Positions 9,197-42,390 of a stretch of 64,000 nucleotides of DNA are shown here, in pieces. The first letter of the stretch is position 1; each line of letters opens with the position of its first letter. Below the pieces are notes generated by a model that searched no databases, had not been told where the DNA came from, and saw nothing but the letters and a program-made list of their open reading frames with translations. The translations under genes and the position numbers were made by a program. Origin of the DNA: Schmidtea polychroa (taxonomy: Eukaryota); the NCBI GenBank assembly GCA_044892525.1, contig CM097886.1, forward strand, positions 2,790,001 through 2,854,000, written 5' to 3'.

Positions 9197-9280
<84 letters not shown>
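9197..9280. repeat. (AAT)n microsatellite
   Basis: Direct reading. Confidence 0.97.
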
Positions 9281-9281
<1 letters not shown>

Positions 9282-16490: not shown

Positions 16491-16717
16491 AATCACTCGG
16501 GGACCCATCAAAATTGCGTCCCGCAATTGCATAATTAACTTAATTCATTCATTCGAAAAAAAAATATAACACGAACACGAAAAATTATACAACAATGATA
16601 AAAATTTTATTGTAAGATCAAGGTCAAAGCAAGATCAAGCAAGTATCACTTAAGGTGATAGTTTGTACATACAATAAAAGTTTCCACATATAATAACACA
16701 AATGTTTGAGTTAGAGT

Positions 16718-17374
16718 TTATGAACTGTTAACTATTGATGCTTCTGCTGGCGGCTGTTGGTTGGTTTGGGTATTAATGTTGAGATAGGTCTGACTATTAG
16801 ATTTCGGCTGGATTGGTTGATTACTCGGGGTTCGAGGTCGGTTAAGATTTGTCAGGGGCACTTCTTGAGGATTTTGGTTCGAGGTTACTCTTATTGATGT
16901 CGAGACTCTACATCTATTTCGAACTTCGTAAATTTTCATGAATATTGGTAGACATAGGAGGAGGGTTTCTGCGATCACCACATATATGAGATAATGGGTG
17001 TCATTGATTTCGGGAGGTATTTTTGGCTTTTCTACCAGATTCCCAAAATTCTCTTGTTGCATTTGTTGTTCCAACTGGTCGAATTGTTGAATTTGTTCGA
17101 GGATTTGTTTGTTTATCATTTTACAAATGGGATTCTTTTTACACATTGTTTGGATGTTGTTGATGTGTGATCGGGTTGATTGAATGGTTTGGATGATATG
17201 GGTTTTTACGGTCATCGGGTATGTGCATTGACTGGATTCTTGTTTAGGTTCTTGATTTTGATTTCGGTAATCTCGTACGATTTTCGGTTGGGCGTCTATT
17301 TGTTTGCTCTCCATCAGAATCATCAATACCATCATTGTTATCATCATCTCGCCTCGCATGATACTATTATACAT
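16718..17374 (-). CDS. 218-aa predicted type I membrane protein, unknown
   Basis: Met-rich signal MMITMMVLMILMESKQIDA|Q, Cys-containing helical ectodomain, TM YLIYVVIAETLLLCLPIFM, and a P/Q/N/T-rich tail. Confidence 0.7.
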   Translation of the reverse strand: MYNSIMRGEMMITMMVLMILMESKQIDAQPKIVRDYRNQNQEPKQESSQCTYPMTVKTHIIQTIQSTRSHINNIQTMCKKNPICKMINKQILEQIQQFDQLEQQMQQENFGNLVEKPKIPPEINDTHYLIYVVIAETLLLCLPIFMKIYEVRNRCRVSTSIRVTSNQNPQEVPLTNLNRPRTPSNQPIQPKSNSQTYLNINTQTNQQPPAEASIVNSS

Positions 17375-17414
17375 TCATTATGTTTATTTACAATTGGTTT
17401 TAATGACCCTTAAT

Positions 17415-18167
17415 TTAATGGTTCTGATTTGGATTATTTTCGCCGATTCTCATCAAGGTGGACTCTGCTTTAATTACCCTGTGTCTTAACTCGGGCAGCA
17501 TTTCCAATTGTCGGTCTTTTTCACGGGCTTCTCTCTTTAGATGTCTAATTTCTTTTTCCAAGCGTCTAATTTCTTCCCTTTTCTTTTCAAGGTTTCTTTT
17601 TAGCTCGATTTGTAGGAGATCTTGTTCGTTTTCTTGCAGGTAATTTTGTTGTTGATGTTTTCTTTCTATTTCTCTATATTTGCGGACCCACTTCCTCATT
17701 TCTTTACTTTCCCGTTGGTTTTCTTCTAGTTGTCGTTTTAATTTATTTATAGCTGTTTGGCGCTCCTTCGCCTCAGTTTTCCAGTAGTCTTGGATTACCT
17801 CCTTTGCTTTGAAGCTTGCCCTCTCTTTCCATAGTTCTTCCGCTATCTTTTCCCAGTTTTTCCCTCGCTTCCTTTGTTCGTGTAGCCATTCATTTTCCTC
17901 TTCCGTTTCTCTTTTTATTTCCCCCAACGCTTCGCACTCTTTCTTTAACACCTTTATCATTTTCCGGTCCTCCAGGTATTTGTTTATTAATCTCCCGTTT
18001 TCGTATTTCTCTTCCCGTAACTCGGCCTTTAGCGTTTGTGTTTCTGTTGTTTCTGCCTCAATCTCTCCCTCTTCTACGTCGCTCATAATTTCTATCATTT
18101 CCTCGATTTTCATATCTATAATATGTACAGTTAATGGTGCGCTATAGTGCGACTTATACGTATACAT
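17415..18167 (-). CDS. 250-aa (or 232-aa from ATG 18113) coiled-coil protein, unknown
   Basis: E/K/R-rich heptads with spaced Trp; attatag acceptor 2 nt before ATG 18113. Confidence 0.72.
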   Translation of the reverse strand: MYTYKSHYSAPLTVHIIDMKIEEMIEIMSDVEEGEIEAETTETQTLKAELREEKYENGRLINKYLEDRKMIKVLKKECEALGEIKRETEEENEWLHEQRKRGKNWEKIAEELWKERASFKAKEVIQDYWKTEAKERQTAINKLKRQLEENQRESKEMRKWVRKYREIERKHQQQNYLQENEQDLLQIELKRNLEKKREEIRRLEKEIRHLKREAREKDRQLEMLPELRHRVIKAESTLMRIGENNPNQNH

Positions 18168-18281
18168 TGATATAAAATTTAATAGTTTGGGTTACAGTCC
18201 CCTGAATACTTTTACAATACTTTAATTTTTTTGTTTGGGATATACGTCCCGGTTTTTAGTTTTTCATCTTTTCATCCATCC

Positions 18282-19337
18282 TCATACGAAGGTTTCCTCC
18301 TGGCCTACATAACCTTCATCACTATCGACCGTGGAATGTAACTGTATCGCAATAGGGTCGTATGGTAGGTAATATTGGGGAATTTGAGCTCTCAATTCAC
18401 TAACTTCGTCTCTTAGAGCTCGAGTGATATTCAATTCCTCGTCGAGCAGATAGGTGAGATACCTTGTCTCTTCATCTTTCGCCTCTATCTGTTTGTCTAG
18501 GGCCTTGATTTTCTCGTCGCCCTTCCATTTTTCAATTTCTATTTCTAAGTTTTTAATATTTTCGGTGTACATTTTCCTTTCGTTTTCTAATTTTCTGTTT
18601 TTTCCCGCTAGGACCATGTTTCTTTGTTCCAGCGATCCTTGTAATCCATTAAGGTCTCTTTTCATCTCTTCTACCTGATTTACTAATTCCACAACCCGTC
18701 CCGCTTGTTGGGTTATCATCTCTTCCATTGCGGCATTCTCGTGCTCTCTTATGTCGCACTTCATTGCCAAATGTCGCTCAAACTCCATAGCCTTTGTTTG
18801 CCAGGTTTGGCTTCGGGCGGCGACCTTTCTCAACCTTTTCAATTCTTCCTTTATTATTAAATTCTCCTCCCATTTACCTTGTTCGCTTTCATATCCGAGT
18901 CTCCTGGGCAATTCTTTCATCTCTTTTTTCATGTCTCTGTTTTGTCTTTTCCATTTTCTCGCTTCTGCCACTAAGTGCATCATTTTCCTGTCTTCTATTT
19001 GCTTTTCCGCTTCGCGCTTGGTGTTCTCATCGGTAAGTCTTTTTCTCGCTTCCTGCACTAGCTGCTTTAAGTAGTGGCTGTGTGCTTCTTGGCGGGTATT
19101 TTCTAGTGACGCCCATTTTGATGCTCTTTTGCATGCTTCTGCTTCCGCTCTTAAGTTGTGTATTAACCATTGGTATTGACTATTCTCATCTTCTCTAGTT
19201 TCTTCGATGTGATTTCGGGTGAGATTAGTTAGTTGGAACATTACTTTGTTCCATTTTTTGTTATGTTCTCGGGGAATTTGTGTCTTGTTGACATTGGTTG
19301 GGTCTATCGCAGTTTCGGTTATTTTCTCTTGTGTCAT
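18282..19337 (-). CDS. 351-aa coiled-coil protein, unknown
   Basis: Long E/K/R-rich heptad ORF; tttag acceptor 2 nt before the ATG. Confidence 0.75.
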   Translation of the reverse strand: MTQEKITETAIDPTNVNKTQIPREHNKKWNKVMFQLTNLTRNHIEETREDENSQYQWLIHNLRAEAEACKRASKWASLENTRQEAHSHYLKQLVQEARKRLTDENTKREAEKQIEDRKMMHLVAEARKWKRQNRDMKKEMKELPRRLGYESEQGKWEENLIIKEELKRLRKVAARSQTWQTKAMEFERHLAMKCDIREHENAAMEEMITQQAGRVVELVNQVEEMKRDLNGLQGSLEQRNMVLAGKNRKLENERKMYTENIKNLEIEIEKWKGDEKIKALDKQIEAKDEETRYLTYLLDEELNITRALRDEVSELRAQIPQYYLPYDPIAIQLHSTVDSDEGYVGQEETFV

Positions 19338-19530
19338 TTCTAAATCATAGACATCGATTAATCTTTTTATTATGAAAAAGGAATTTATTCATTATTTACT
19401 GTTTCTTGGGAAATTTTCGCATCATTTTTGGGTTTTCGTATTTAGGGTTTTCATACTATTATTATATAATATTTTATTAGTTATATACACCGATATATAC
19501 AGATTATTATATACAACATTATTCGATTGG

Positions 19531-20919
19531 TTATTCCGTTCTACCCTTCTCCTCTTTCCTCACGGTCATCTTGATATATATGGTATCATTTCTCGCCATA
19601 TCTTCTACTCTTTGTTGTGAGATGAACGTAGGTGCTCCTGTTGCTGATCCTTCTTCGTTGAGGGGCCTCTGGTAAGCTATTTGATTCCCCGTTGTTTTGA
19701 AGCTTTGCTCATATATACTTTGGTTGTTCATCAGAGTAATATCGATTTTTGCCTGGAACGGCCATTCTAATATTTCGTCGTATTCTCCTTTACATAACAG
19801 AAAGAAAATCGAAAAGTGCGTATCTAATCCGGTTCCGTCCCCGTTGGGATATAGCTTCATTTTCATTTTGTACCCATTTTTCCAAGAATGGAATGTAGGA
19901 CTTGTTATTCTTGTCTCTTCTCCGGTTTTTGCTTTTCGTATTCTTTCTTTTACTCCCGTTATTTTCCATATGTAGGGTGCTGTTGGGGTTATCTCATTTA
20001 GATTTATTTCCCGTATTTTCTGATGTAGCTCCTTGGCCTGATTATTACTAATTTCTGTTCGGTTTATTTGCATCTTTATGTTTGCTCGGGCTTCTTCGAA
20101 CGCTTTCCTTTCTTCTAGTAGTTCTTTGACTAACACTTTCAACGATGTTATCTCTATCTCCATTTGTTTTACTTTCTCTTCGCTTTCTTGTAACGCAGTC
20201 GACCACATTTCTGCGTGAGTTGAAGCATTTTCTACTAAATGATGTGGTAACTCACCTCGGTGTAGTAATTTCTGACAACCCCATCTACCTAGTACACATG
20301 TCATTCTTTTCTTTTCGCATTCCCTTAGATGCTGTGCCACCTTTATTGTTTCCCCTTGGTTACATCCGTTTGGGCATTCCCCACTGAACTCCGCACATAC
20401 TCTCTCCTCTTGGACATTGTGATGTTTGAGGGTGAGATTTATCCACGTATCTATTTCTCCACAGTGTTCACATCTTTCCAATCTCTCCTCACACTGCCTT
20501 TGATGCTCTTTTTCTTCGCTTGCTCGAATGGTTTTATGGCACCTTTCACACTGGCCAATTCTGTACATACATTCTCCCATATGTTGTACTACCTTCCATA
20601 TTACTCCTTTCCATTCGCATGGGGCATTTTTGCATCCCAGGTTGGTGTTTAACATGTCTTTCACTGCGGCTTTATCCTCGTTAGTGTCTTCTAAACTCGA
20701 TATTAGTGTCTCTTTACACACCGGGCACCTTTGTGGTCTATTCTTTATTGCTTCACTGATACATTCTTTACATACTCTGCATCCACATTGCGTTTGGTGA
20801 GGTTCCTTTAACAACTTTTCACATATTCCGCACATAACATGTTTGTGTATTCTGATCGTTGTAGATTTTCGGACTTGCTCGACAATCTCTCTGAACTCTT
20901 CTCTTTGTCGTTTATCCAT
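19531..20919 (-). CDS. TRAF: Intronless full-length TRAF homologue (RING, zf-TRAF repeats, coiled coil, MATH), 462 aa
   Basis: CGIC..CGCRVCKEC..CPVC; five Cys/His fingers; YIWKI...SPTF...GYKMKMKLYPNGDGTGLDTHFSIFFLLCKGEYDEILEWPF...G.PTF. Confidence 0.93.
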   Translation of the reverse strand: MDKRQREEFREIVEQVRKSTTIRIHKHVMCGICEKLLKEPHQTQCGCRVCKECISEAIKNRPQRCPVCKETLISSLEDTNEDKAAVKDMLNTNLGCKNAPCEWKGVIWKVVQHMGECMYRIGQCERCHKTIRASEEKEHQRQCEERLERCEHCGEIDTWINLTLKHHNVQEERVCAEFSGECPNGCNQGETIKVAQHLRECEKKRMTCVLGRWGCQKLLHRGELPHHLVENASTHAEMWSTALQESEEKVKQMEIEITSLKVLVKELLEERKAFEEARANIKMQINRTEISNNQAKELHQKIREINLNEITPTAPYIWKITGVKERIRKAKTGEETRITSPTFHSWKNGYKMKMKLYPNGDGTGLDTHFSIFFLLCKGEYDEILEWPFQAKIDITLMNNQSIYEQSFKTTGNQIAYQRPLNEEGSATGAPTFISQQRVEDMARNDTIYIKMTVRKEEKGRTE

Positions 20920-21004
20920 TCTATAATTATATGTACAAATAGTTCTTATCGATACAGGTTCGATATTTTATTTACAATTATTTACATTTTGAGCTAGGTT
21001 TGGT

Positions 21005-21364
21005 TTAGGGTTCGGAAGAGTCGGCTTCGTGTCCGCTCTCCTCTCTATTCATTAGCCATTCCGACCAGTCTTCTATTTCTGTCTGTTCTGCTTCCTCCAT
21101 CATTCTGTCTATTTCAATTTCCTGTCGACGGCTATATTGGGTTATCCTCTCTATCTCTCTTTGCATTTGTTCGATTTTTAACCTCTGGTCTTCAATTATC
21201 TTCAAATAACTAAATCCTCTGTTCATACTCTCGATCAGGTTTCTGTGCATCGTCAGTCCTTGTTCTTGCAAATTGGACACTAATTGTGCTAATACGGCAC
21301 ATTGTTGCTTCCATAATTCTTCAGTTACTGTATTGTGGTTCATTTCGTTATTTCCTTGATCCAT
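21005..21364 (-). CDS. 119-aa coiled-coil protein, unknown (track start is a TTG at 21388; first ATG at 21364)
   Basis: Same strand and purine-rich composition as neighbouring ORFs; TAG acceptor 2 nt before the ATG; AATAAA at 20972-20967. Confidence 0.65.
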   Translation of the reverse strand: MDQGNNEMNHNTVTEELWKQQCAVLAQLVSNLQEQGLTMHRNLIESMNRGFSYLKIIEDQRLKIEQMQREIERITQYSRRQEIEIDRMMEEAEQTEIEDWSEWLMNREESGHEADSSEP

Positions 21365-21524
21365 TCCTAATTTATATACTCTTTTCAACTCTTATGTAAA
21401 TTTAATTTTATTTTATGATTCCCGTTATTGTATAATATTGATACCGCGCTTATATAAAGATATAATACTGTTATATACATAAGATATACTTACTTTTTAC
21501 AATTATATACAGTCATATTCCTTT

Positions 21525-22526
21525 CTATATACGTGAGTTTGGAGGGCGCTGAGCGTTCCAGGCCTCCACCCACTGTTCTTGTTTGATATCACTTGGTCGT
21601 TTCACTCGATGTTGGAAATTTCTGATTCGAGTCATCTCTAGTTCTCCGCGATGTCGTTTACCCTTAATTATTTTTATTGTTCCCCCCGTTATGATTAAGA
21701 ATGCCCCTGTTATTATTATCCCACTGATCCACATCATCTGCTTCACGCTTATACTCTCTGGTTTTTCCTGGTTTGTTAATGTTGATATTGCTTCTGTACT
21801 TTTCTCGTTCCCTCTTTTGCCGTTTCCTTTCATCCTTTCCCGTATTCTTGCTATTTCCTCGTTCATACCCTCCTTTGCCATCTTTTGTATTTTTTCCATC
21901 TCTTCTTCCGAAACATAGTTGTCCTGAGCTTCCTCGCCGGTTTTCTTGTGCTTTCCTCCTTCGTCCTTTTCGTCGTGGTTTTTCCTTTTCTTTCCTCTTT
22001 TCCCCGGGTATCGTCGGCATTCTCTTTTTGATTCGTTTCTCCAGATACAAACCGTATATTCCTTCGGGGGCTGCTGCTGCGTCACATATTGATGGCATCT
22101 CTCACCCGGTCCTAATCTTGAAATACAGACTTTGTGCTCTTTTCTTGGTTGGAGCTGCGTTATTACTACTTCGCCACCTTTTCCTAGGTGTACCTCTTTT
22201 CCTTTAACGTTCGTTATTCTTTTCCCGTCTCGGTTTCGGTATGCTTCTTGTATTCTTACTTCTGTTATTGGTTCTGTGTCCTCATTTATCAGTACTAGTT
22301 TCTGATACGCTCTAGACATGCATCTTCCTAGTATGCACCTTTCCTTTAAGTCCCATTCTTCCTTTAAATCCCACTGCTGCTCTTGTGCTTGCTTTTTCTT
22401 TTCTTGTTTTAGTTCGTCCTCTTTGCTATCTTGATTCTCCGCTTCTTTGGTTTCTTTTATCGTCCTCGTCCCTCCATGAGCTGTTACTAACTCTATCATG
22501 GTAAGCATAATTATCATTAATATCAT
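21525..22526 (-). other. C-terminal second membrane-protein module (signal-like segment, Cys-containing ectodomain, TM, short tail)
   Basis: MILMIIMLTMIELVTA|HG (22526-22479); VVITQLQPRKEHKVCI, resembling an FN3 strand motif; TM MMWISGIIITGAFLIITGGTIKII (21737-21666). Confidence 0.6.
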
Positions 22527-25500
22527 ATTTGTCTCTATTTCTTTGTTAGTGAAAGGTAGGCATACCCTCTGTTTTCCATTATTCGATTTTTCCTCCTCTT
22601 TGGTCTTAGTTCCCGGGCTGTTTCCCTCTCTTTTCGTATCCGAATCCTTGTTTTCCGGTTTACCCTCCTCCGGTTCTCTTTTCTCTTTGTCCTCCTTTCG
22701 GCCTTTTCCGTTATTGTCATCGTGTTTATCTCCCCCGCTGTCGTTTAAAATGTCGTCCTCGACATTTATATCGTTCAATAATCTGCGATATGCTGTTAGC
22801 ACTCTGTTTCTTGCTAATTTTGCTTCGAATTCAAACTCTTTTCTACCCGTTGCAGCATGTCTCTTTCTATTCCATTCTTTAACTAACTCTCTCAATTGCA
22901 TACGACGATGTTTCCCAATTCGTTGTTGCTCGTTCTGATTTTGCGTGAATTTTAGGTCTTCTCTATTTAATACTATTAAAATAATTTTAGGCGTCCCCCC
23001 CTTAGTTAGGGTATTCTTTACCATCGCATTTTCTCCGTTTTCGTAGAATTCGTTTACATTTATCGCATATTTATTATTTTGTGGTACTCTCCAGGTTAAT
23101 AATAATTTCATTGCTTCTAGATTTTTCCGTACCGTATTCCATTGAAACTGAGATGTGTTTTTGCACATATTTTCAACTTCTTCTTTTGTCGCATTTTTGC
23201 AAATAAATCTGATCATTTCTAAGTTTGGCTGTATGGTTGCCCAGTCCAAGGTGGAATTTCCTTCATTGGACTTTTCGTCTAGTTTCGATCCTGATTGATG
23301 TAGGATGTGGAGTGTTTTTGGGTGTATTTTCGTTATAGCTGCATACATCATGGCGGTTTCACCTTGTTCATTTTTCGTGTTGGTTTCCTCGCCCATCTCT
23401 CCAAGGATTCTCACGATCGTTATTGCTCTATTTTCTTTCGCCGCTAGTATTGCTTGTTGTAGGGGTGTTCTGGAATCCTTCGTTACCATCGTAAATGCTC
23501 GAGGCAAGAAGGTTTTGATTTTCCCGATATCCAAATCCGTGGTTTGATCTCTTGCGTATGTGTGTACGGCTTTTATTATTTTGGACAATATTATGTCGTC
23601 TGGCAGCTCTAGCATTTCCTCAAAGAACACTTCTTTTGCTTTGCGTATTATTGCCTCTTGATCTATACTCATTGATTTGGTTTTGATGACGTTGTTTGTG
23701 ACCGTTTGGTTCGTTGTTGACTTTGATTCCCTGGATTTCTCATACCTTATTTTCGTTTTCTTTCCGTTTGGATTATTGATTCGTTCCTCTGCTGTAAGTA
23801 TTTGGATAATATCCAGGTAATTCTCGCGGATGTTATTCATTGTGTCCATCATATATAACACACTTACCGTTTCCCAATATTTATTTCGTACTTGGTTAGT
23901 AAATTGGAATAGTGATTTTTCGAATGTGTCGATTCGCTTTTTTGTTAACTGTTCGTCTTTGTGATTTGTGAAATTTATTCCTCGTTCTAGTAATTGATTC
24001 GGAATTTCGAATAAATGATGTCCTTTCATAGCTTCTCTCATCAGCGTGTTCTCTCCTCTCGTGAACGCTTCGTTTACGTTGATCATATAATCGTTTTGAA
24101 TTGGATTTCTCCATGTAATTAATATTCCGGTAATTGTCGTCAGTTTTTCTTTGATCGCTGTTAACAATCCATCATACATGTTTCCGACTTCCCGATTGTC
24201 CTCATATGATAGTAGTTCCATCAATGACGTGAACGCCTCGGTACTTCTCCCTTCGATGGCATGATGTAGAGCGTTTTTCCGCTCGTGGTCTTGTGTAGTT
24301 ATTTTCGATCCGGTATCGAGTAATGCGGTTATAATGTCTTTTGTTTTGCCTCTGTTTGCGGCTATCATTAATGGTGTGTAACCTTGGTTGTTTGTTTGTT
24401 CTGTTGATCGCTTGCAGTCGTGAAATGCTTCTATTGTTTCTAGTATTTGCTCGTTGTTACCTACTTTCATGAGTTTGTGTAATGGTGTGTCTCCGTAATG
24501 ATCTGTTATTGTAAATAATATTGGCCATTGGCTTTTGACTACTCGCAATAATGGGTGTGTCCTTTCTCTATTTGCATAGTTCTCGATCATCGTCAATAAT
24601 CCTCCTAATATTTCGAAATCTAATCGATCTTTTGCCCATCCAGGTATTTTAATTTTTACCTCCTTTACAATCTTTTCCGCTTCTGATGGTTGGATACCTA
24701 ATCGTCCAGTGATTGGTTCTGCGAGTTGTTGCATCATGTTCATTCGGTAGGTTTGCGAACGTGTGGTTAATGTACGGCCTTCTGGTTGACTAGTGGCTGT
24801 TTTTGGAATTGATTTGCATCGTGCCACGTTTACGTATATTGGTCTGGTAAAGGGGTTATTTACCAATTTCACTCTTACATTAGTTTCGCCTACGAATAAG
24901 ATCTCATATGGTCCTTTTCCGTTGCGTTGTAACTTTTTTGTGGTTCCTGGAATTAATTCCGGGGTTTCTATCATTACCCAATCACCTGTTTGGAACGTAT
25001 GTTGCTTCACGTTTTTCTTTCGATCGTGTAAATCTTTATAACTTTCCTGGTAGAACTTGATATTTAATCCCGCAGTTTCCCAAATTTCTTGCATTCTTTC
25101 CTTGAATTTCGTAACATAATCATCGATCTCCATATACTGCGATATCGGTGGTTGGTATTCCAGGTCCATTGGCATATTACATTCTCTTCCGTACATTAAT
25201 TTGAATGGGCTCATTTTCGTTGATGCGTGAATCGACATTCTGTACGCCATAAGACATAGGTTTATATATTCATCCCAATCTCGTTGGTGACGGTCAACGT
25301 AGTTTGATAACATTTGTATAAGTGTTCCATTAAATCTTTCCGTCATCCCATTGGTTTGAGGGTGGTATGGAGATGTTCTTAGTTTTGCTATTTTGAAGTA
25401 ATTTGTTACTTCGCTCATTATCTCACTCATAAAATTAGTTCCCTGATCGGTTAAGATTTGTTTTGGTGTTCCATATCGGCAACATATCTCTTCTACCAAA

Positions 25501-31500: not shown

Positions 31501-34500
31501 TGGTTATTAGTCCACATTTCGGCTCCTGTCGGCCATCTCACTAATAGCGGTGATCTTTCTCCTGGTTCATCGTCACTATCTTCCAGGATTATCTCTTCAA
31601 CTTCTTCAGTTTCATTAGATTTACTTGGTGCTTTGTTCGGACTTGGAGTACTCAAACTGCCTTTTGTTGGTTTAATAATTTTACTTTTCCTTTTTAACGG
31701 TTTTCCCAACGTTTCTGCCATTGTTAACACATTTGTCTCTTCCAATCTCATGGGTGTTATCCCGACGTCTGCATTATCGTCTAGTGATTTTCCGAACAGT
31801 TGCAGATGGAATGGAGTTTCATATGCTAATTTCTTTTTTAATTCTCTAATTTTTGTTGTTGGATGCACCTCTAGTTCCTCGATGCTCTTGTCCGGATACT
31901 TGATTCGGATGTGATACCTCTCCTGAGTGTCTTGTGCCCATTCCTGATTTCTCCATTTTCGAATAATTTGTTCTAGCTGTTCTGGATACCATTCATTATA
32001 TTGCCGGTATTCCTCTATTGCCTTTGCCATTCCTCTCAGATTGTGGATGTTCTCTGATGTCTTTAAGATGATGTTAGCCAACGCTACTACTTGGCGTTTT
32101 TGATTTTTCGCTCCCATTGCTAAGATATCGCCTAATTGTTTATATCTTTCTGTCTCTTCTCGTTCTCTTGCTTCCGTCGCTTCCTCGCCGTCCATATCAG
32201 CATATTCACGTTCCTTTTTCCTCATTGCATGAATATGTCTCGCTTCATTTTCGCTTTCTGATGTGACATCCGTCTCGCTTTCGTCATCTGATGTCTGTCC
32301 CCTTGCTTCCTCTTCATATTCTGGGGGTTCCTCTTCTTCTTCCTCCGATTCACTTTCTGTCTCACCAATGTCTGTTTCTACGAAGATTCCTTTCCGGATT
32401 TCCCATTCCTTACTTTCTGCATTCCACACTCTTTCCCATGGGGTTCGTCTGCAGGATCTGGTATTTAATTTCGTGATTTTTCCTTGTAGCTCTTTTTCTT
32501 TTAACCATTGTTGGTGGATTTCAATTATTTCTGTCGATTTTTGATACAACGTTTTCATCCGGTCTCGTATTTCTTTTTGATATGTTACATCTCTTGTTCG
32601 GAATTCATCCATTGGTACTATCCTGATTATCTGATGATTGTCCCACATACCCATTTCGCTTAACGAGGTGTCGTCCTCCGCTCGTAATATTATCTTATCG
32701 TACATCATGACTACATCATCCACCATACCATCACTACTTTCGCTACGTACCTTTTCCGTTATCTCTTGGTTTATTTTTGATACCAAGTCATCCACTGTAC
32801 TCTGATTGCTCATTCTTATTCGTCGTTTTTCTTCGTTCGGTAACCATATGGTTATTTCCAACCTCTGTGGCTGGGTTTCTTTTAACCTTCCATATTTGTG
32901 GATCAAATTTATGGTTCTCCAATCACTCATTCGGAGCATTTCTGTATCTCGCAACCGGCTCATTAGTTCGTACATGGCTGGGGCTCGTCTGGTGATGAGT
33001 AAATCCCAGTTGTCTTCTACTTGTTCTTGAATTTGTTTGATCAGCTTATCCAGGTTTCGTCTCAGAGTACATTGTTTTATTTGTTCTAATTTCAATTTGA
33101 TATTAAAATCATATTCTGCCTTGGCATCTTTAGCCCAATCGTAAAGGTGGGCTGGTTGTTTTTCTTTATGCAACTTCAGTATTTGCGTTTCTCCTGGCCA
33201 TATTAGTGCATCTACTAAGTGCATATCTGGTTTGATCCGTCCTCCTTGGTATTGATACAGATATTCTTTCTTTCTCGAACTTCCCAAATGTTCTCGTATC
33301 CAATCGAAAAGTTCGTCGGTGACTGTATTTTTTATCCACATTCTTTCAAGTCCTCTACTCGTTCCAATTTTTATTACATACCGCGTGGTATCGGCCTGCT
33401 TCATTTTTTCCATATAGTTTTTTATAATTGGTTTTTCCTCGTTTGGTATTAGATCTTTCTCGTTTCTTTCCAATTTCATCACTTTTTGCACGAATCGCCT
33501 GAATGGTATTACGTCGATGAACTCTTGGTTCCTCACTACTACTGGGAGTATTTCGGCTACCTGTTTTATCGCTTCCTCCCTTGCTTTTCTCAACTTTATT
33601 TCGATATCTTCGTCTTCACTTTCGCTGGTTATCTCGTTTCCGCTTTCTTCCTCTTTGATTTCCCCTTTTGAGGGTTCGCTTATTTCATTCGGCTGTAGTA
33701 TTTCTCCACCCAAACTACTTACATAATCTTCTTCTTCGTCTGACGATGCTACATCTTTTGTCCTTTTCATCATATTGATTTGCAAGTTTCTCATCCTTGG
33801 TACTCTCTTTAGTTTCTTTCTTTCGAATATTGTTGTTTCTTCTGATTCTGATTCTTGTAGCATTTGGTGATTTAGTTGACTGGTTTGTTCCTCGCTCTTG
33901 TTATTTTCATCTTCTGTCTCAGTTTTCGCTTTATTATGTTCTTTTTCGATTTTATCCTTTATCTTTTTCCAGAATATTTTCTGAATTCTCTGGTTTCCCT
34001 TTGAAATCGTGGTTGAATTCTCTGTTTTCATTTCCGTTGTTATTTCCTTTACTTTTTCTGGTTCAGTCATGGGTACTACCCTTGGGCTTTTCCCGTAATT
34101 GTAGCAATACTGGCTCTTCATGTCTTTTACTAACTTCATCATATTTATTCGCAATGGTTGTTCTTGTCGTTGTTGGTTGCGTTCTTGTTTTATCCTCTCT
34201 TCCTCGGCCTGTAGCCTTTGCCATTCTTGTACATGTTGATGCACTTCATAATTGTTGAGATTTTCGGTACTCCTCATCATACGTATATTCTGGGTTTGTT
34301 GTGGTGCTGATTCTTGTCTTGGTCTCATCATTTGTTGCATCATCTGTTTCATCTGCGAAATTTCCTGCATAACGTTCATTTGTTTTCCTTCGTTAGGGTT
34401 ACTTTGTCGTTGCGGATTCGCTATATAATTATTATTTCGCTGTGGTGGTCGTTGTTGTTGGCCCCTTTCTCGGCAATCTCTGGAGATGTGACCTGGCTGA

Positions 34501-35378
34501 CCACAGTTAAAACAGCCTCGCAATTGGCATACATTTTCGGTATGTCCACGCCGTCCGCAACGATTACAATTTGAATTTCTATAACAATCTCTGTCCCAGT
34601 GTCCTGGTTTACCGCATGTTCGGCACTGCTTGTTATCGTTCATATTTCGCCGATTATTGAAATTGTTCTCATTATTCGGGTTGTTACGATTACCATTATT
34701 CCCGTTTGATCGTCCTTGTGGTGGTTTGAAAATTTGGTGCGCTCCTGGTATAAATTGATTCATTTTCGGTTCTTGATTGTTGTTATCTCCGTTATCCGCT
34801 TTCGCTATTGCTGTCGCTATCCTTCCCTCCTCTTGCATAATATTCATTTGAGCTGGAAGGTGGAGCTCGCATCTTGTAGCCCAATCTATGGCTTCCTCTA
34901 ATGTTTTGCACATTTGACAACCTACTGAGGCTCTTACTTCTTCTCGGCGTAATCCCTCTATGAAATAACCAATCAGATTTTCTTCGGGTAATTTTCCATT
35001 CATTGCTTTCTTCGCTAATCTCCGCAATTCACTGGCATATAATGTTATCGATTCGTTTGCTCTTTGTTTCCTATTTGCTAGTTCGCCCAACGCCTGGTTG
35101 ATTGGCTTACTGGCTCCGAAGGTTTTCTTCAGGAATGTTTTAATATCTTCCCACTTTTCTAATTTCGTGTCTCTCTCTTTAGCTTCTAAATATACCTCTA
35201 ATGCACTATCGCACAAAAACAACGGCATCCTTTTACTAATTGCTTCGGGTGTCCATCCACACACAGTGATATAAACTTCAAAATTAGTTATGAACGTTGC
35301 TAGCTTGTTTGCATTTCCGTTGAACGGTTCTCCTCTGAACTTCTCTTTATACTCGTCGGTTTTTACGACATTCGTCAT
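21525..35378 (-). CDS. 4,617-aa single-ORF polyprotein: Gag-Ubl x3-Bcl2-like-Env-PR-RT-RH-IN-ANK-membrane module
   Basis: Uninterrupted ORF; domain motifs are itemised in the following features. Confidence 0.95.
   Translation of the reverse strand: [4617 protein letters not shown]
22995..24500 (-). other. Two ankyrin-repeat blocks (24020-24500, 22995-23475) fused downstream of integrase
   Basis: [48 protein letters not shown]. Confidence 0.85.
24800..25860 (-). other. Integrase (HHCC, DDE, GPY/F)
   Basis: HDGRLGGH...CLTC; [34 protein letters not shown]. Confidence 0.95.
26150..27420 (-). other. pol: Reverse transcriptase (YIDD 26930-26919) and RNase H
   Basis: [75 protein letters not shown]. 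Confidence 0.97.
27600..28200 (-). other. Aspartic protease (DTG at 28148) followed by a dUTPase-fold-like spacer
   Basis: [12 protein letters not shown]...IIGTDLM; spacer [15 protein letters not shown]...IPLNITNF. Confidence 0.85.
28791..30587 (-). other. env: Envelope glycoprotein, chuvirus (Jingchuvirales) G-like / class III fusogen-like, with internal signal peptide and TM anchor
   Basis: Signal [21 protein letters not shown] (30587-30528); YDC, [51 protein letters not shown]...LFPA motifs; furin-like REKR (29795-29784); TM [25 protein letters not shown] (28865-28791). Confidence 0.8.
30700..31170 (-). other. Bcl-2-like helical domain
   Basis: BH2-like [14 protein letters not shown] and a divergent BH1-position segment [16 protein letters not shown] at Bcl-2-like spacing; the NWGR motif is not conserved. 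Confidence 0.55.
31719..33386 (-). other. Three ubiquitin/SUMO-like modules (33168-33386, 32613-32861, 31719-31916)
   Basis: Each about 65-85 aa with a beta-grasp-like pattern, e.g. [30 protein letters not shown]...[10 protein letters not shown] and [29 protein letters not shown]. Recognised by eye only. Confidence 0.55.
34473..35378 (-). other. gag: Gag region: capsid-like domain plus three CCHC zinc knuckles (aa 252-302)
   Basis: [19 protein letters not shown]...W; [42 protein letters not shown]. Confidence 0.9.
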
Positions 35379-36632
35379 GATTGGTGTTCTAGGTTCGTCT
35401 GTTTCTTTTAAATTGTCTAACGATGTGACTAAACTTTGGGCTGATAATTCTTCGGTTGACGTTGCTAAACTATTAGTGATATCGGACAGACTTTCTCTAC
35501 TTCGAGATCGACTAGGGGTATATCCGAGATTTTCTTGGTCAAATATGGGTACTTGATTGGTTCTTCTGGATCCTTGTGATATTCCTCTTTGATGTTTAAT
35601 GGATCGTCCTCTTTTGAGTTGTTGTAATTCGTCTCCTGAAAATAATACGTCTCCTGGCTTACTTGAAGATCTAAGATTGGGTTTATCCGTGATTCCTTTC
35701 TTACGCTTCTTGGTAATTAGCGGCTATTGAATTGGTCGCGTTCGGTTCTGATTGTGTTTCTAATCCTTGGCAGATGGCTGCTAATACTTCTTCCGTTCGG
35801 GAGTCTTCCGGTTGCTGTGTCTCTCGGTGCGGGTTCTGAATGGATTTATCCTTGGTTGATTGTCGATTTCTTCGAATTCCTTTTGTGCAGGTTCTGGATT
35901 GTCTTGGTTGGCTGGATTGGCTTGATATCTAAAATGAAAAAATGATCTCGTGTTGCATTTGCTTACACGACTTCATCATTCTTTCTACAACGTTCAAAAA
36001 CAGACACCTTTTAGGTTTCTGTTTGTGCTTCCCCTATCTTTTGTGAAATCCTTTCTGCGGGTTATAATATCCCATCAGCCCGTATTTTCCGTCGATTTTA
36101 AATTATCTATATGGGGTAGTAACAATTATCTATAAAGTCGTAATAATTATCTATTCGTTATCAATTATAGTAAAAATAGGTCGTTGTCGGTCTCTGCTTA
36201 TTACCCCCCTTTCATTTTCCTAATCCTTTTGCGCTGTTGTCGCTATTTTACTTTTCATATTCACTATTATTACGCTCGGTTCTACTCTGGAACCAATAAA
36301 ATGCATTTTCCCGGTTTAACCAAAAAAAATATTCCGTAGAGTTTCTCTACTTCACTGGGATCCCTTTAATTAGTTAGTTACTTTCCTCTTTACTCATTAT
36401 CATCATTTCATCTACTCTTTATTTTCTATTATCTCTTTAATTCGTTTCCTTCTTCCCTTTCCTTTTTCATTATAATCTTATTTTCTTTTCCACGAGCTCG
36501 TTTATTTCCTCTCTAAACTCGAATTTTCAAAATTACATTCAATTTGTTCTAGCTAGCTTTAATATTCCATATCACTAGTAATTTAAATATTATCTCATTG
36601 TAGCTTAACTGCTATCTCTCGCTTTTCTAGGC

Positions 36633-37150
36633 CTTTACGACTGGCTGGCACTATTCAACAGCTCAATCTTCTTCCTTCTGATCGGTTGGACTATTCAACA
36701 ACTCAATCTTACGACTGGCTGGCACTATTCAACAGCTCAATCTTCCTCCTTCCTGATCGGTTGGACTTTTCACAACTCGACCTTACGACTGGCTGGCACT
36801 ATTCAACAGCTCAGTCTTCCTCCTTCCTGATCGGTTGGACTTTTCACAACTCGACCTTACGACTGGCTGGCACTATTCAACAGCTCAATCTTCCTCCTTC
36901 CTGATCGGTTGGACTTTTCACAACTCGACCTTACGACTGGCTGGCACTATTCAACAGCTCAATCTTCCTCCTTCCTGATCGGTTGGACTTTTCACAACTC
37001 GACCTTACGACTGGCTGGCACTATTCAACAGCTCAATCTTCCTCCTTCCTGATCGGTTGGACTTTTTCACAACTCGACCTTACGACTGGCTGGCACTATT
37101 CAACAGCTCAATCTTCCTCCTTGACCGGCTGGATTATTCGACAGCTCGGC
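36633..37150. repeat. Tandem array of a 74-bp unit (about 6.7 copies) in the element leader
   Basis: Unit starts at about 36634, 36707, 36781, 36855, 36929, 37003 and 37078. Confidence 0.93.
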
Positions 37151-37743
37151 TTTAATATTCCTCGCTCTGCATGCTTCTATTTCTCTTTTCTTCTTTTACT
37201 CTAGTTTACCATTTTCTCTATCTACTTTTAATTTGTCGACTTAATCTTTACCGCTTGGGAGTGTTTCCCCTTTCCCCCCTTGCTCAAAACGCACGACGAT
37301 CGCGATGATCCATTTCTACATTGGCATGGTGATCAGTCATGTCGCAAAAACTTCTCATCATATGCGATGGTACCCCGCCCTACGCTTCTTACTTGGGTTG
37401 ATCAGTTATCCCCTCCCAACGGGTTCTTGCAATAAGACGTACCGCCCGAAGGTGGCTCGGTTTGTACCCCTGCAGTCTATATTGGGACTAATTCCACGTT
37501 ATTCAACCCTCTCTTCATTTGATTCCAAAAAAAAAAAAAAAAAAAAAAAGGAATAAAACAAAATAAACACGCAAATGTTCATTCGTCATGCAAATTTTAT
37601 TAGTCCTAATCATCAAAACTTTTTAAAGACGAATTTATTTATCATAAACATAAAGATTGAATCATTAACAGTACGTGTTACTTCAACAATTTCATGCATT
37701 CTTGTTCAAACATCGTATACTTGCTGTTACATCGCCGGCCGTT

Positions 37744-38229
37744 TCATTCGCCATAATAGACCATATGGGTCTCTTTTATTTCATATTTGCACATCGTGCA
37801 TCTTTTTAGGTCTTTTACACACTCTTCACAGTGACTGAGGTGTCCACACGGCAAGAATAATACGCGAATAGGACGGAGTTTGCAGGCTATACAAGTTCGT
37901 AATTGGTTAACTTTTTCCTGTATTTTTTGTTCGATTGCATCTGGTATTGTATTTAGTGGGTCTTTTAGACGCTGATAATCTAGATTTAATGTTGGGTGGT
38001 TCAATCTCTCTTGATACCACTGATATACGGTTTCGGGGTTTATTTTTCCATCTGGGCGACTTAGGCCTGTGGCTAATATCATATGATTAGGTACGACTGG
38101 TGTTTGTCCGATTGCTTGCAGTAATATCGCGTTGATTTTTTCTCTTTTATGCGTCAGTGTTGTTAGGGAGTCGTTTTCTATATCGATAAACTTGAGCAGT
38201 TGTTGCATTTGGTTCGCGAATTCTGTCAT
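37744..38229 (-). CDS. 161-aa protein with C-terminal IAP/MDM2-type RING finger (no BIR seen)
   Basis: CIACKLRPIRVLFLPCGHLSHCEECVKDLKRCTMCKYEIKETHMVYY, near the C-terminus; acceptor ttttccaacag 2 nt before the ATG. Confidence 0.85.
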   Translation of the reverse strand: MTEFANQMQQLLKFIDIENDSLTTLTHKREKINAILLQAIGQTPVVPNHMILATGLSRPDGKINPETVYQWYQERLNHPTLNLDYQRLKDPLNTIPDAIEQKIQEKVNQLRTCIACKLRPIRVLFLPCGHLSHCEECVKDLKRCTMCKYEIKETHMVYYGE

Positions 38230-38546
38230 AGCTGTTGGAAAAGTAATGTTTTAATAATATGTAGTAAATTAATAGTTAATTCGTTAATTGGTTTCTTTAA
38301 CCATTGTTAATTATTTAATTTGACTACTTTATCTCCTTTATTTATATATATCCTTAATTTTTCTATTATCTACATTTTGATTTTCTCTACTTAGTTCCTA
38401 ATATAATTTAATAATCAATAGTCAATTTGCATTCGTCAAGCAATGGTCGGTTGAAAACAGAAAATCGATGTGATAAATCCCTTTAATTTTGTATGAAAAT
38501 CCCGGTGAATTTCGCATTCGTTAATAGAAATTTCGATCGACTGTAT

Positions 38547-38564
38547 ATCCCGGCTGAGCCCCCA
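38547..38564 (-). promoter_or_regulatory. Primer-binding site, tRNA-Pro-like
   Basis: Minus strand TGGGGGCTCAGCCGGGAT, 7 nt inside the 5' LTR; 16/18 identical to the classical MLV tRNA-Pro PBS TGGGGGCTCGTCCGGGAT. Confidence 0.85.
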
Positions 38565-39106
38565 AAAATCATGTTGGGGTTACACCTCGGCTGACCGCTC
38601 TACCATATTGACGGGTCTAAGGGTTGATTGTCCATCTCGAATAAAAGGTGCCACCGATTTGTCAACCTGGAGTGAAACCCCACATAATCTTTCTTCCAAC
38701 ATAGTGCCCGTGAATCACTTCACGTTGGTACTGCACTATGCAGGCGAGACACCAGCAAGCAGGTGAGCTTCTGCCTTGAAACTACTCCTTGCTGAGGCCT
38801 CGACTTCCCATTCACGACTGCCGATAGAAGGGCTTACGTCCATTTCCTTACACAACCACTTATCAGGATTCGCTGAATGCAAATTGGGAATTTCTCACTA
38901 GATCCTGCGGGTTCTCTACTCAACCCACTTAATTAAAGTCTAATTATTCATGAACGAAAACGTGTAAGACAACAAGATTTATTAATTTCAACGTTATGAC
39001 ACAAGGATTCAGCTGTACACTTTACTAATGTTTGTCGAAAGAAGAGAAAACATCATAATCAACATAGATCGGATCCTTGTTCTTCATCCTGACCGCCACT
39101 GGGGTT

Positions 39107-42263: not shown

Positions 42264-42390
42264 CTATGAAATGCTCGGGGTTAACAGTAAAAACAGTAAA
42301 CATTTTTCTTACCTATGAAATGCTCGGGGTTAACAGTAAATTTAATGTTTTTGGTAGTTGTATATATATCAAATTCTTATTTGTGCGGAC
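42264..42390 (-). promoter_or_regulatory. Candidate LTR promoter/leader: CCAAT box, TATA-like tract, 28-bp direct repeat x2 enclosing a GTAAG donor (also 16023-16150)
   Basis: ggaccaatcag, then a TATATA tract, then repeats at 42340-42313 and 42291-42264; minus strand reads ...catag|gtaagaa. Confidence 0.45.

What the first reader, a model, noticed from the sequence alone, without database searches (positions are those of the whole stretch)
16718..38229. A retroelement carrying a cell-death / NF-kB signalling toolkit
Seen together in one element: TRAF, an IAP-type RING, a Bcl-2-like domain, ankyrin blocks, three Ubl modules and two non-Env membrane modules. Established: TRAF2/3 and cIAP RING ligases act together in TNF-receptor/NF-kB signalling; Bcl-2 mimics and ankyrin (IkB-like) proteins are used by large DNA viruses and polydnaviruses to block apoptosis and immunity. 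Inference: a coordinated host-manipulation system that keeps carrier or infected cells alive, a large-virus strategy in an LTR element.
Basis: partly seen in the sequence, partly recalled or inferred. Interest (0 to 1): 0.85.

Follow-up and report, generated by a model that had tools for sequence, protein, structure and literature searches.

The report
Giant Burro-type planarian-like LTR retroelement
This is an intact, very young 30-kb copy of a "Burro"-type giant gypsy-like retrovirus-like element; such elements are already known to carry TRAF, RING, Bcl-2-like, ubiquitin-like and ankyrin modules, and the idea that these meddle with host cell death is already in print and still untested.

Summary
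The domain inventory is largely real. The region is the interior of one LTR element on the minus strand, 12331-42731 (30,401 bp). It has two identical 4,160-bp LTRs, TG..CA ends and a 4-bp target duplication. A single 4,617-aa ORF encodes, in order: Gag with three CCHC knuckles, cargo, a rhabdovirus-G-like fusion glycoprotein in frame, PR, RT, RNase H, IN, two ankyrin blocks and a tail. A stand-alone IAP-type RING ORF lies 5' of gag. A complete TRAF (RING, zinc fingers, coiled coil, MATH) lies 3' of pol, with four more ORFs of no recognisable family.

Strongly confirmed: TRAF, IAP-type RING, ankyrin, Env and the Ty3/gypsy core. Below threshold but specific: the Bcl-2-like module and one ubiquitin-like module. 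Unverified: the other two Ubl modules. "Membrane modules" are only hydrophobic segments.

This architecture matches the published Burro/GYPSM1 giant gypsy-like elements of planarians (PMC6431247), including env in frame between gag and pol. That review already proposes meddling with apoptosis and ubiquitination.

This copy differs in having TRAF as a separate 3' gene, and it has no BIR domain. Nothing here tests function. Verdict: real, remarkable, already known.

The parts
12331..42731 (-). Whole LTR retroelement, 30,401 bp, flanked by the 4-bp target-site duplication CTAT (12327-12330 and 42732-42735)
   Evidence: Self-BLAST and end inspection. GC is about 39% against about 25% in the flanks, and the coding strand is A-rich.
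38572..42731 (-). 5' LTR, 4,160 bp, TG..CA ends with a short terminal inverted repeat. It contains a 250-aa ORF (39107-39859) and short AT-rich tandem repeats.
   Evidence: 100% identical to the 3' LTR over 4,160 bp; ends; ORF; repeats.
12331..16490 (-). 3' LTR, 4,160 bp, with the same 250-aa ORF at 12866-13618
38547..38564 (-). Candidate primer-binding site: 18 nt starting TGG, 7 nt downstream of the 5' LTR
   Evidence: Read from the sequence. No tRNA gene in the window to compare with, so this is inferred only.
37744..38229 (-). 5' accessory ORF, 161 aa, with a C-terminal IAP-type RING (C3HC4) and no BIR domain
   Evidence: Pfam zf-C3HC4_3 E 3.4e-11; PDB cIAP2/cIAP1/XIAP RING E 2.6e-10 to 1e-7; ligand pattern.
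36635..37122 (-). Tandem array of a 74-nt unit, 6.6 copies, 97% matches, in the long leader between the RING ORF and gag
21525..35378 (-). Single intact 4,617-aa ORF: Gag, cargo, Env, PR, RT, RNase H, IN, ankyrin, tail
   Evidence: PR DTG, RT YIDD, IN HHCC and DD35E motifs are present.
34464..35378 (-). Gag: Retrotrans_gag (aa 52-145) and three CCHC knuckles (aa 252-302)
   Evidence: Pfam; PDB Arc capsid-like hit; knuckle count.
33159..33383 (-). Putative Ubl-like module 1 (aa about 666-740), unverified
   Evidence: No profile hit. Conserved with P0008. Beta-beta-alpha in a low-confidence model.
32604..32864 (-). Putative Ubl-like module 2 (aa about 839-925), unverified
   Evidence: Conserved with P0008. 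Weak hhalign to module 3, P 0.002. Low-confidence model.
31704..31916 (-). Ubl-like module 3 (aa about 1155-1225), below threshold
   Evidence: Pfam ubiquitin E 0.015. Same position as the Ubi2/SUMO-like motif reported for Burro.
30699..31169 (-). Divergent Bcl-2-like module (aa about 1404-1560), below threshold but specific
   Evidence: Pfam Bcl-2 E 0.076. Relative L002 has Bcl-2 E 0.00096 at the same place. Profile A2 hits Bcl-xL/Bcl-2. All-helical prediction.
28761..30590 (-). Env: hydrophobic signal-like segment (aa about 1597-1620), class III (rhabdovirus-G-like) fusion glycoprotein ectodomain, and membrane anchor (aa 2170-2206), in frame between gag and pol
   Evidence: PF24664 E 1.7e-70; hydrophobicity; 14 Cys in the ectodomain.
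27915..28190 (-). Aspartic protease (aa 2397-2488, DTG)
26199..27401 (-). Reverse transcriptase and RNase H (aa about 2660-3060, YIDD)
   Evidence: PDB Ty3 Gag-Pol E 8.5e-121 and Ty3 RT/RNase H E 5e-92.
25164..25877 (-). Integrase (aa 3168-3405; HHCC zinc finger and DD35E core)
24177..24509 (-). Ankyrin block 1 (aa 3624-3734)
   Evidence: Pfam Ank_2 E 1.7e-17; PDB.
23085..23489 (-). Ankyrin block 2 (aa 3964-4098)
   Evidence: Pfam Ank_2 E 1.2e-08; PDB.
21663..22538 (-). Polyprotein tail with two hydrophobic segments (aa 4281-4304 and 4545-4572) bounding a 240-aa stretch with 6 Cys. No family match.
21005..21388 (-). 127-aa ORF with a TTG start and no family match. Its length is not beyond chance.
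19531..20919 (-). 3' accessory gene: complete TRAF, 462 aa (RING with a C4C4 ligand set, TRAF zinc fingers, coiled coil, TRAF-C/MATH)
18282..19337 (-). 351-aa ORF, charged and probably coiled-coil, no family match
17415..18167 (-). 250-aa ORF, highly charged and coiled-coil-like (weak Rad50/SMC/fibrinogen coiled-coil matches only)
16718..17374 (-). 218-aa ORF with one hydrophobic segment (aa 126-151), no family match

Best explanation
The region is the interior of one intact, recently inserted Burro-type giant Ty3/gypsy (errantivirus-like) LTR retroelement. It is 30.4 kb, lies on the minus strand, and sits in an AT-rich, planarian-like genome.

Shown by the sequence.
- The LTRs are identical, and there is a target-site duplication.
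- A 4,617-aa polyprotein carries Gag, an in-frame class III fusion glycoprotein, and PR-RT-RNase H-IN with all catalytic motifs.
- Cargo modules are fused into the polyprotein: Ubl-like, Bcl-2-like and ankyrin.
- Other cargo is encoded as separate genes: an IAP-type RING-only protein 5' of gag, and a complete TRAF plus three to four orphan ORFs 3' of pol.

Inferred.
- One long LTR-driven transcript is translated into the polyprotein.
- The hydrophobic segment before Env acts as an internal signal sequence. The Env ectodomain would then enter the ER lumen and the anchor at aa 2170-2206 would return the chain to the cytosol.
- The protease releases the modules.
- The accessory ORFs are read from spliced or subgenomic RNAs.

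Most likely role of the cargo (inferred, about 40-50% likely). It consists of captured host-type adaptor and E3-ligase modules that act on host ubiquitin, TRAF and cell-death pathways in cells expressing the element, as already proposed for Burro. Nothing here shows that the modules act together, or in which direction.
For: Structure.
- LTRs 100% identical over 4,160 bp, with TG..CA ends and TSD CTAT.
- Ty3 Gag-Pol is the best solved relative, E 8.5e-121.
- Domain order Gag, CCHC x3, cargo, PF24664 Env, PR, RT, RNase H, IN, Ank.
- 84% of the interior is coding on one strand, far beyond chance.

Cargo.
- TRAF.
- IAP-type RING.
- Ankyrin.
- Bcl-2-like, below threshold but specific.
- Ubl-like, below threshold.

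Family.
- PMC6431247 describes Burro/GYPSM1 as more than 30 kb, with a 4,873-aa ORF1 holding Gag and three CCHC knuckles.
- It lists the modules MATH_TRAF_C, Ubi2/SUMO-like, BCL2-like and ankyrin, and RING/BIR motifs.
- It also reports tandem repeats and env in frame between gag and pol.
- GAG-ENV-POL order with class III Env is reported for Platyhelminthes (PMC13524379).

Long-term retention of cargo.
- The Ubl1-Ubl2 block is 29-33% identical to P0008, and a short segment is 58% identical to P0009. Both proteins also carry TRAF parts.
- L002, whose pol is 47% identical, has Ubl, Bcl-2-like and ankyrin modules.

Expression of the family. BURRO1 RNA is abundant, enriched in intestine, and controlled by the PIWI protein SMEDWI-2 (PMC8532177).
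Against: - The host species could not be identified. No reference Burro sequence was available, so assignment rests on architecture, AT-rich flanks and the literature description.
- The nearest database proteins with the cargo block are only 29-58% identical and of unnamed origin.
- No dUTPase-like domain was detected between PR and RT, although one is reported for Burro.
- TRAF is a separate 3' gene here. It is not inside ORF1 as in Burro-1, nor in an upstream ORF as in the Girardia (Dugesia) tigrina element.
- No BIR domain is present.
- The Bcl-2 and Ubl calls stay below curated thresholds, and the structure predictions failed (pLDDT 41 and 38).
- With identical LTRs the copy is too young for its intact ORFs to prove selection.
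- Close relatives L001, L003 and L004 lack the cargo, so it is dispensable for this kind of element.
- No expression or function data exist for this copy.
Confidence: 0.85

Rival explanations
1. The cargo serves the element's own replication cycle rather than host cell-death or NF-kB control. Ubl modules and the RING/TRAF ligases would work in polyprotein handling, particle assembly, budding or turnover. The ankyrin blocks directly after integrase would tether or target integration, in the place where chromoviruses carry a chromodomain.
For: - The ankyrin blocks follow IN immediately.
- The Ubl modules sit between Gag and Env, inside the structural half of the polyprotein.
- There is no BIR and no IkB-specific likeness.
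- Module positions shift among relatives while staying inside the polyprotein.
Against: - TRAF-C/MATH, the IAP-type RING and Bcl-2-like folds are, by established knowledge, signalling and cell-death modules.
- Relatives without them (L001, L003, L004) keep the same Gag-Env-Pol plan, so the replication machinery does not need them.
Confidence: 0.25
2. The cargo modules are passengers: host gene fragments captured by template switching and carried along without benefit to the element.
For: - Cargo content and position vary among relatives, and some relatives lack it.
- The identical LTRs mean this copy has had no time to decay.
- The Bcl-2-like module has lost canonical motifs other than GGW.
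Against: - The Ubl1-Ubl2 block and the TRAF parts are retained as open frames between lineages that have diverged to about 30-37% amino-acid identity.
- All zinc ligands of both RINGs are kept.
- The TRAF has its complete four-part architecture.
- Every ORF of 218 aa or more is intact on a strand where stops occur at 0.07 per codon.
Confidence: 0.15
3. The 30-kb structure is an assembly chimera or a nest of several elements and host genes between two unrelated repeats, not one element.
For: - Identical 4.16-kb repeats can arise from assembly collapse.
- An N run begins 41 bp beyond the right LTR.
- The element's proteins are not on record elsewhere in the collections searched.
Against: - The matching 4-bp duplication CTAT lies at both outer ends, and the termini are TG..CA.
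- One uninterrupted 4,617-aa frame joins gag, cargo, env and pol.
- All ORFs share one strand and a uniform composition distinct from the flanks.
- The same architecture is published for Burro.
Confidence: 0.03

Closest known systems
Burro / GYPSM1 giant gypsy-like LTR retrotransposons of dugesiid planarians (Jurka 2007; Grohme et al. 2018; reviewed in PMC6431247)
   Same: - Total length above 30 kb, with multi-kb LTRs and tandem repeats.
- One ORF of more than 4,000 aa starting with Gag and three CCHC knuckles.
- Cargo in the order Ubl-like, Bcl-2-like, then a mononegavirus-G-like env in frame before PR.
- Ankyrin repeats after IN.
- TRAF/MATH and RING motifs, and accessory ORFs.
- An AT-rich host genome.
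   Different: - ORF1 is 4,617 aa (Burro-1 4,873; the Girardia tigrina element 5,140).
- TRAF is a complete stand-alone gene 3' of pol. It is not a MATH domain inside ORF1 as in Burro-1, nor in an upstream ORF as in the G. tigrina element.
- The upstream ORF here is a RING-only IAP-like protein.
- No BIR, midasin-like or dUTPase-like match was found.
- The cargo block is only about 30% identical to the nearest database relative.
- Sequence-level membership in Burro-1 to -4 could not be tested.
Env-carrying Ty3/gypsy elements (errantiviruses) with GAG-ENV-POL order and class III (gB/G-type) Env in Platyhelminthes, Nematoda and Bryozoa (PMC13524379)
   Same: - Ty3/gypsy pol.
- Env of the class III fusogen type, placed between gag and pol.
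- Relatives L001-L004 recovered here show the same order.
   Different: - Those elements are of ordinary size and are not described with signalling cargo.
- Here gag, env and pol form one continuous frame, and about 1,300 aa of cargo lie between Gag and Env.
Cellular TRAF1/2/3/5 adaptors and cIAP/XIAP RING ligases
   Same: - The 462-aa ORF has RING, TRAF zinc fingers, coiled coil and TRAF-C.
- The 161-aa ORF ends in a RING closest to those of cIAP2, cIAP1 and XIAP.
   Different: - TRAF identity to any named TRAF is only 27-35%.
- The RING protein has no BIR domain, so it is not an IAP and lacks the known TRAF2-binding part.
Bcl-2 mimics and ankyrin (IkB-like) proteins of large DNA viruses and polydnaviruses
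   Same: A mobile, virus-like genome carries a divergent Bcl-2-like module and short ankyrin-only blocks.
   Different: - This is analogy only.
- The Bcl-2 call is below threshold.
- The ankyrin blocks have no specific IkB likeness.
- Both are parts of a retroelement polyprotein, not separate genes.

Membership tests
Ty3/gypsy LTR retroelements (Metaviridae) | PR-RT-RNase H-IN order with RT/IN of the Ty3/gypsy type | tested here: met
   Pfam order. Best PDB match is Ty3 Gag-Pol, E 8.5e-121. Catalytic motifs present.
Ty3/gypsy LTR retroelements (Metaviridae) | Direct LTRs with TG..CA ends and a short target-site duplication | tested here: met
   4,160-bp LTRs, 100% identical; TG..CA ends; 4-bp CTAT duplication.
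Ty3/gypsy LTR retroelements (Metaviridae) | tRNA primer-binding site next to the 5' LTR | tested here: inconclusive
   An 18-nt stretch starting TGG lies 7 nt from the LTR. No tRNA was available for comparison.
Burro giant gypsy-like elements | Length above 30 kb with one ORF of more than 4,000 aa joining gag and pol | tested here: met
   30,401 bp; 4,617-aa ORF.
Burro giant gypsy-like elements | Mononegavirus-G-like env in frame between gag and pol | tested here: met
   PF24664 E 1.7e-70 at aa about 1600-2207 of the same ORF, before PR.
Burro giant gypsy-like elements | Cargo set: TRAF/MATH, RING, ankyrin | tested here: met
   TRAF is in a different place (a separate 3' ORF).
Burro giant gypsy-like elements | Ubi2/SUMO-like and BCL2-like motifs upstream of env | tested here: inconclusive
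   Ubiquitin E 0.015 and Bcl-2 E 0.076, both below the Pfam cut-offs. The profile with L002 hits Bcl-xL at E 0.016.
Burro giant gypsy-like elements | dUTPase-like domain between PR and RT | tested here: not met
   No Pfam match at E up to 10 in aa 2200-2750. A 172-aa spacer exists.
Burro giant gypsy-like elements | Sequence similarity to the curated Burro-1 to -4 references; host in Dugesiidae | not testable with these tools
   No reference sequence or planarian assembly could be reached. Grohme et al. 2018 is not held. Flanks are about 75% AT, as reported for Schmidtea.
TRAF family | N-terminal RING, TRAF zinc fingers, coiled coil, C-terminal TRAF-C/MATH | tested here: met
   Pfam. PDB TRAF-C E about 1e-28 and TRAF6 RING-zinc-finger E 1.5e-14. 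The sequence shows eight zinc ligands in a C4C4 pattern.
IAP family | At least one BIR domain | tested here: not met
   No BIR match in the 161-aa ORF or anywhere else in the element.
IAP family | C-terminal RING of the IAP type | tested here: met
   zf-C3HC4_3 E 3.4e-11. cIAP2/cIAP1/XIAP are the best PDB matches, and the RING lies at the C-terminus.
Bcl-2 family | Match to the Bcl-2 family profile at the curated threshold | tested here: not met
   14 bits against a cut-off of 31.4. Relative L002 scores 20.1 bits.
Bcl-2 family | Helical-bundle fold with BH1-BH2 region | tested here: inconclusive
   All-helical but low-confidence model. The fold search was uninformative. GGW aligns with the Bcl-xL BH2; the Bcl-xL NWGR stretch is not matched.
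Ubiquitin-like (beta-grasp) domains | Profile or fold match for each of three modules | tested here: inconclusive
   Module 3: E 0.015 over half the profile. Modules 1 and 2: none.
IkB-like ankyrin proteins | Specific similarity to IkB/NF-kB-precursor ankyrin domains | tested here: not met
   The best ankyrin matches in PDB are latrotoxins, Kidins220, DARPins, NOMPC and MIB1. No IkB is among those listed.

The most novel reading that the evidence does not exclude
This copy may represent a Burro lineage not yet described in print, with three distinguishing points.
- A full-length TRAF with its own RING and a RING-only IAP-like protein are stand-alone accessory genes flanking gag-env-pol, rather than domains of the polyprotein.
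- Four further orphan ORFs and an LTR-borne ORF are present.
- The identical LTRs and intact reading frames point to very recent insertion.

If the copy census showed these accessory genes to be conserved under purifying selection and separately transcribed, it would be the clearest case of a retroelement with a complex-retrovirus-like set of host-derived regulatory genes in an invertebrate.
Probability: 0.3. Interest if true: 0.5.

Novelty: already known. Interest (0 to 1): 0.3.

Why it matters
Burro-type elements are the largest LTR retroelements known. They make up a large share of planarian genomes and carry an unusual load of host-type adaptor, E3-ligase and cell-death modules, together with a viral fusion glycoprotein. 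If these modules really act on host pathways, this would be a retroelement using a strategy otherwise typical of large DNA viruses, in an animal whose biology depends on long-lived stem cells. That idea is already published. This window adds an intact, apparently very young copy with a different arrangement of the same parts, useful as a reference for comparative work but not a new kind of system.

Tried and rejected
**Searches and models that led nowhere**
- Exact-sequence look-ups of the TRAF ORF, the LTR ORF and the RING ORF found no record.
- A word-indexed search with cargo aa 620-1620, restricted to long proteins, found nothing.
- An exhaustive HMMER search of 1.84 billion representatives with the same region gave only two relatives. 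No deep alignment could therefore be built.
- Single-sequence AlphaFold2 models had mean pLDDT 41 for the Bcl-2-like piece and 38 for the three-Ubl region.
I ran no further search on the second model.
- phmmer against PDB with the whole cargo region gave no hit up to E 10.
- Profile-profile comparison among the three putative Ubl modules gave only a weak module 2 to module 3 signal, P 0.002.
- Two scans of JGI metagenome contigs with the Ubl1-Ubl2 block, as a single sequence and as alignment A3, found no relative.
- Pfam, NCBIfam and PDB searches of the 127-, 351-, 250- and 218-aa ORFs, the LTR ORF and the polyprotein tail gave only weak coiled-coil or chance matches.
- No Rfam family and no tRNA gene were found in the window.
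- Grohme et al. 2018 could not be read.

**Ideas rejected**
- *The hydrophobic segment before Env is a captured Bcl-2 tail anchor.* Relatives L001, L003 and L004 lack the Bcl-2-like module but still have a hydrophobic segment directly before Env. It therefore belongs to Env.
- *The RT fragments in the right flank are other copies of this element.* They are only 29-32% identical.

Full report
**1. What is in the sequence**

The finding's coordinates (16718-38229) are the interior of a single LTR element on the minus strand.

- Self-comparison shows two direct repeats of 4,160 bp, at 12331-16490 and 38572-42731, identical at every base.
- The repeats have TG..CA ends with a short terminal inverted repeat.
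- The same four bases, CTAT, lie outside both ends.
- The element is therefore 12331-42731, 30,401 bp.
- Its GC content is about 39% against about 25% in the flanks.
- Its coding strand is 41% A.
- An 18-nt stretch starting TGG lies 7 nt inside the 5' LTR and may be the primer-binding site. No tRNA gene was available to test this.

**2. Reading frames**

- One ORF of 4,617 aa (21525-35378) and six further minus-strand ORFs cover 84% of the interior.
- Stops are expected at 0.07 per codon on this strand. The giant ORF is far beyond chance, and so are the ORFs of 218, 250, 351 and 462 aa.
- The 161-aa ORF is borderline by length but validated by homology.
- The 127-aa ORF is not beyond chance.
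- No gene of this copy is interrupted.

**3. The polyprotein, domain by domain**

| Polyprotein aa | Feature | Evidence |
|---|---|---|
| 52-145 | Retrotrans_gag | |
| 252-302 | Three CCHC knuckles | |
| about 305-1600 | About 1,300 aa of cargo | |
| about 1600-2207 | Viral fusion glycoprotein, PF24664, E 1.7e-70 | |
| 2397-2488 | Aspartic protease | |
| 2710-2868 | Reverse transcriptase | |
| 2931-3060 | RNase H | |
| 3168-3340 | Integrase | |
| 3624-3734 and 3964-4098 | Two ankyrin blocks | |
| about 4100-4617 | Tail of about 520 aa, no match | |

- The best solved relative is the Ty3 Gag-Pol polyprotein, E 8.5e-121.
- PR DTG, RT YIDD, the IN HHCC finger and the DD35E triad are all present.
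- Env is preceded by a hydrophobic signal-like segment and followed by a strong membrane anchor at aa 2170-2206.
- I infer an internal signal sequence that places the Env ectodomain in the ER lumen while Gag-cargo and Pol stay cytosolic. This is inference, not shown.

**4. The claimed toolkit, item by item**

- **TRAF: confirmed.**
  - ORF 19531-20919 has a RING, TRAF zinc fingers, a coiled coil and a TRAF-C/MATH domain.
  - Pfam gives E 5.6e-27.
  - PDB gives TRAF1/2/3 at E about 1e-28 and the TRAF6 RING-zinc-finger region at E 1.5e-14.
- **IAP-type RING: confirmed.**
  - ORF 37744-38229 ends in a complete C3HC4 RING.
  - Its best solved relatives are cIAP2, cIAP1 and XIAP.
  - There is no BIR domain anywhere in the element, so the protein is not an IAP.
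- **Ankyrin: confirmed, but not IkB-like.** No specific likeness to IkB was seen.
- **Bcl-2-like: probable but below threshold.**
  - Pfam Bcl-2 scores E 0.076 here.
  - It scores E 0.00096 at the same position, just before Env, in the related locus L002.
  - A profile of the two sequences (A2) retrieves almost only Bcl-xL/Bcl-2 chains from PDB: 58 of 62 hits, best E 0.016, with GGW aligned to BH2.
- **Ubl-like module 3: weak.** It has a weak ubiquitin match over the N-terminal half (E 0.015).
- **Ubl-like modules 1 and 2: no profile support.** They are, however, the best-conserved cargo blocks against P0008.
- **"Membrane modules": hydrophobic segments only**.
- **Structure prediction failed.** No alignment depth was available.

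**5. Relatives**

- The cargo block is nearly an orphan. Two proteins were found among 1.84 billion representatives, both unnamed UniParc entries.
- In P0008 the same Ubl1-Ubl2 block (29-33% identity) is followed by a MATH domain inside the same protein.
- In P0009 the segment after Ubl2 (58% identity) runs straight into TRAF zinc fingers.
- So in those relatives TRAF parts are embedded in the polyprotein, whereas here TRAF is a separate gene 3' of pol.
- The pol region has relatives at 44-49% identity on environmental contigs.
- All four loci fetched (L001-L004) show Gag-Env-PR-RT-RNase H-IN order with the same Env family.
- L002 also carries Ubl, Bcl-2-like and ankyrin modules, with ankyrin in a different position. 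Its gag-to-pol region is called as several separate ORFs, so it is interrupted several times.
- L001, L003 and L004 lack the cargo.

**6. Comparison with what is known**

- The review PMC6431247 describes the Burro/GYPSM1 elements of the planarian Schmidtea mediterranea.
  - They exceed 30 kb, with an ORF1 of 4,873 aa holding Gag and three CCHC knuckles.
  - The modules listed are MATH_TRAF_C, a Ubi2/SUMO-like motif, a BCL2-like motif, a dUTPase-like motif, ankyrin repeats and RING/BIR motifs.
  - Tandem repeats are present.
  - An env related to mononegavirus glycoproteins lies in frame between gag and pol.
- The review notes that accessory ORFs may alternatively exist as subdomains of the polyprotein.
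- BURRO1 RNA is abundant and under PIWI control (PMC8532177).
- GAG-ENV-POL order with class III Env is reported for Platyhelminthes (PMC13524379).
- The Schmidtea genome is more than 70% A/T (PMC11410931), like the flanks here.

The window's element fits this family in every architectural feature tested, except three.

- No dUTPase-like match was found.
- No BIR domain is present.
- TRAF is a stand-alone 3' gene.

I could not reach a Burro reference sequence or a planarian assembly. Sequence-level membership and host identity therefore remain untested.

**7. How it most likely works**

- **Shown:** the gene content and its integrity.
- **Inferred:**
  - LTR-driven transcription of a genome-length RNA.
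  - Translation of the polyprotein, with Env translocated through an internal signal.
  - Release of modules by the protease.
  - Expression of accessory genes from spliced or subgenomic RNAs.
- **Cargo role:**
  - Action on host ubiquitin, TRAF and cell-death pathways is plausible. I rate it 40-50% likely.
  - Retention of these modules across lineages about 30% identical supports it.
  - No result here shows coordination.
  - The canonical TRAF2-cIAP contact needs a BIR domain that is absent.
- **Rivals:**
  - The cargo serves the element's own life cycle. Ankyrin after IN could work as a tether, and Ubl with E3 modules in assembly or turnover.
  - The cargo is neutral passenger sequence.
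  - The locus is an assembly chimera. The target duplication and the single continuous frame make this very unlikely.

**8. Verdict**

- The element is a member of a known family, so novelty is low, although the object itself is biologically striking.

In my working I recalled from memory a few short motif patterns as leads: a dUTPase motif, the last residues of a cIAP RING tail, and a tRNA T-loop.

Noticed in passing
window 39107-39859 and 12866-13618 (minus strand): Each LTR carries the same 250-aa ORF on the element's coding strand, about 2.9 kb into the LTR. It has no family match, only weak coiled-coil or adhesin-like hits. An LTR-borne gene would be unusual for a gypsy-like element.
   Followed up: partly
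window 36635-37122 (to about 37148): A 74-nt unit is repeated about 6.6 times at 97% identity. It lies in the 2.3-kb non-coding leader between the RING ORF and gag. Tandem repeats are drawn in the published Burro maps. Function unknown.
   Followed up: partly
window 6092-6496 (+): A 134-aa ORF with a weak match to the start of the 3'5'-cyclic nucleotide phosphodiesterase catalytic domain (E 0.0005). It may be an exon of a host gene near or around the insertion.
   Followed up: no
window 45549-46216 and 48269-48929: An inverted pair of 668-bp repeats, 97.8% identical, each encoding a reverse-transcriptase fragment. An integrase fragment lies at 49214-49489. This is another, decayed gypsy-like element only 29-32% identical to the main one.
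   Followed up: partly
window 6334-6442, 9197-9281, 50398-50458: Closely related short-period simple repeats occur at three places and in both orientations, two of them near N runs (6869-7057, 8942-9082).
   Followed up: no
L004 5945-6592: The environmental relative L004 (JGI 3300071567) has an ORF with an immunoglobulin domain (Ig_3, E 7.8e-07) directly downstream of pol. This is a different kind of cargo in the same Gag-Env-Pol lineage.
   Followed up: no
L001 1544-8434 and L002 6342-10035: Relatives carry several aspartic-protease-like domains in series (four stretches in L001). L002 has an ankyrin block between Env and the protease rather than after integrase.
   Followed up: no
window 28761-30590 (minus strand): The Env ectodomain (549 aa, 14 Cys) has only one N-x-S/T sequon, which is few for a viral surface glycoprotein.
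   Followed up: no
window 26199-28190 (minus strand), polyprotein aa 2489-2660: The 172-aa spacer between PR and RT has no Pfam match, although a dUTPase-like domain is reported at this position in Burro. By eye it might be a degenerate one. This is a lead only.
   Followed up: partly
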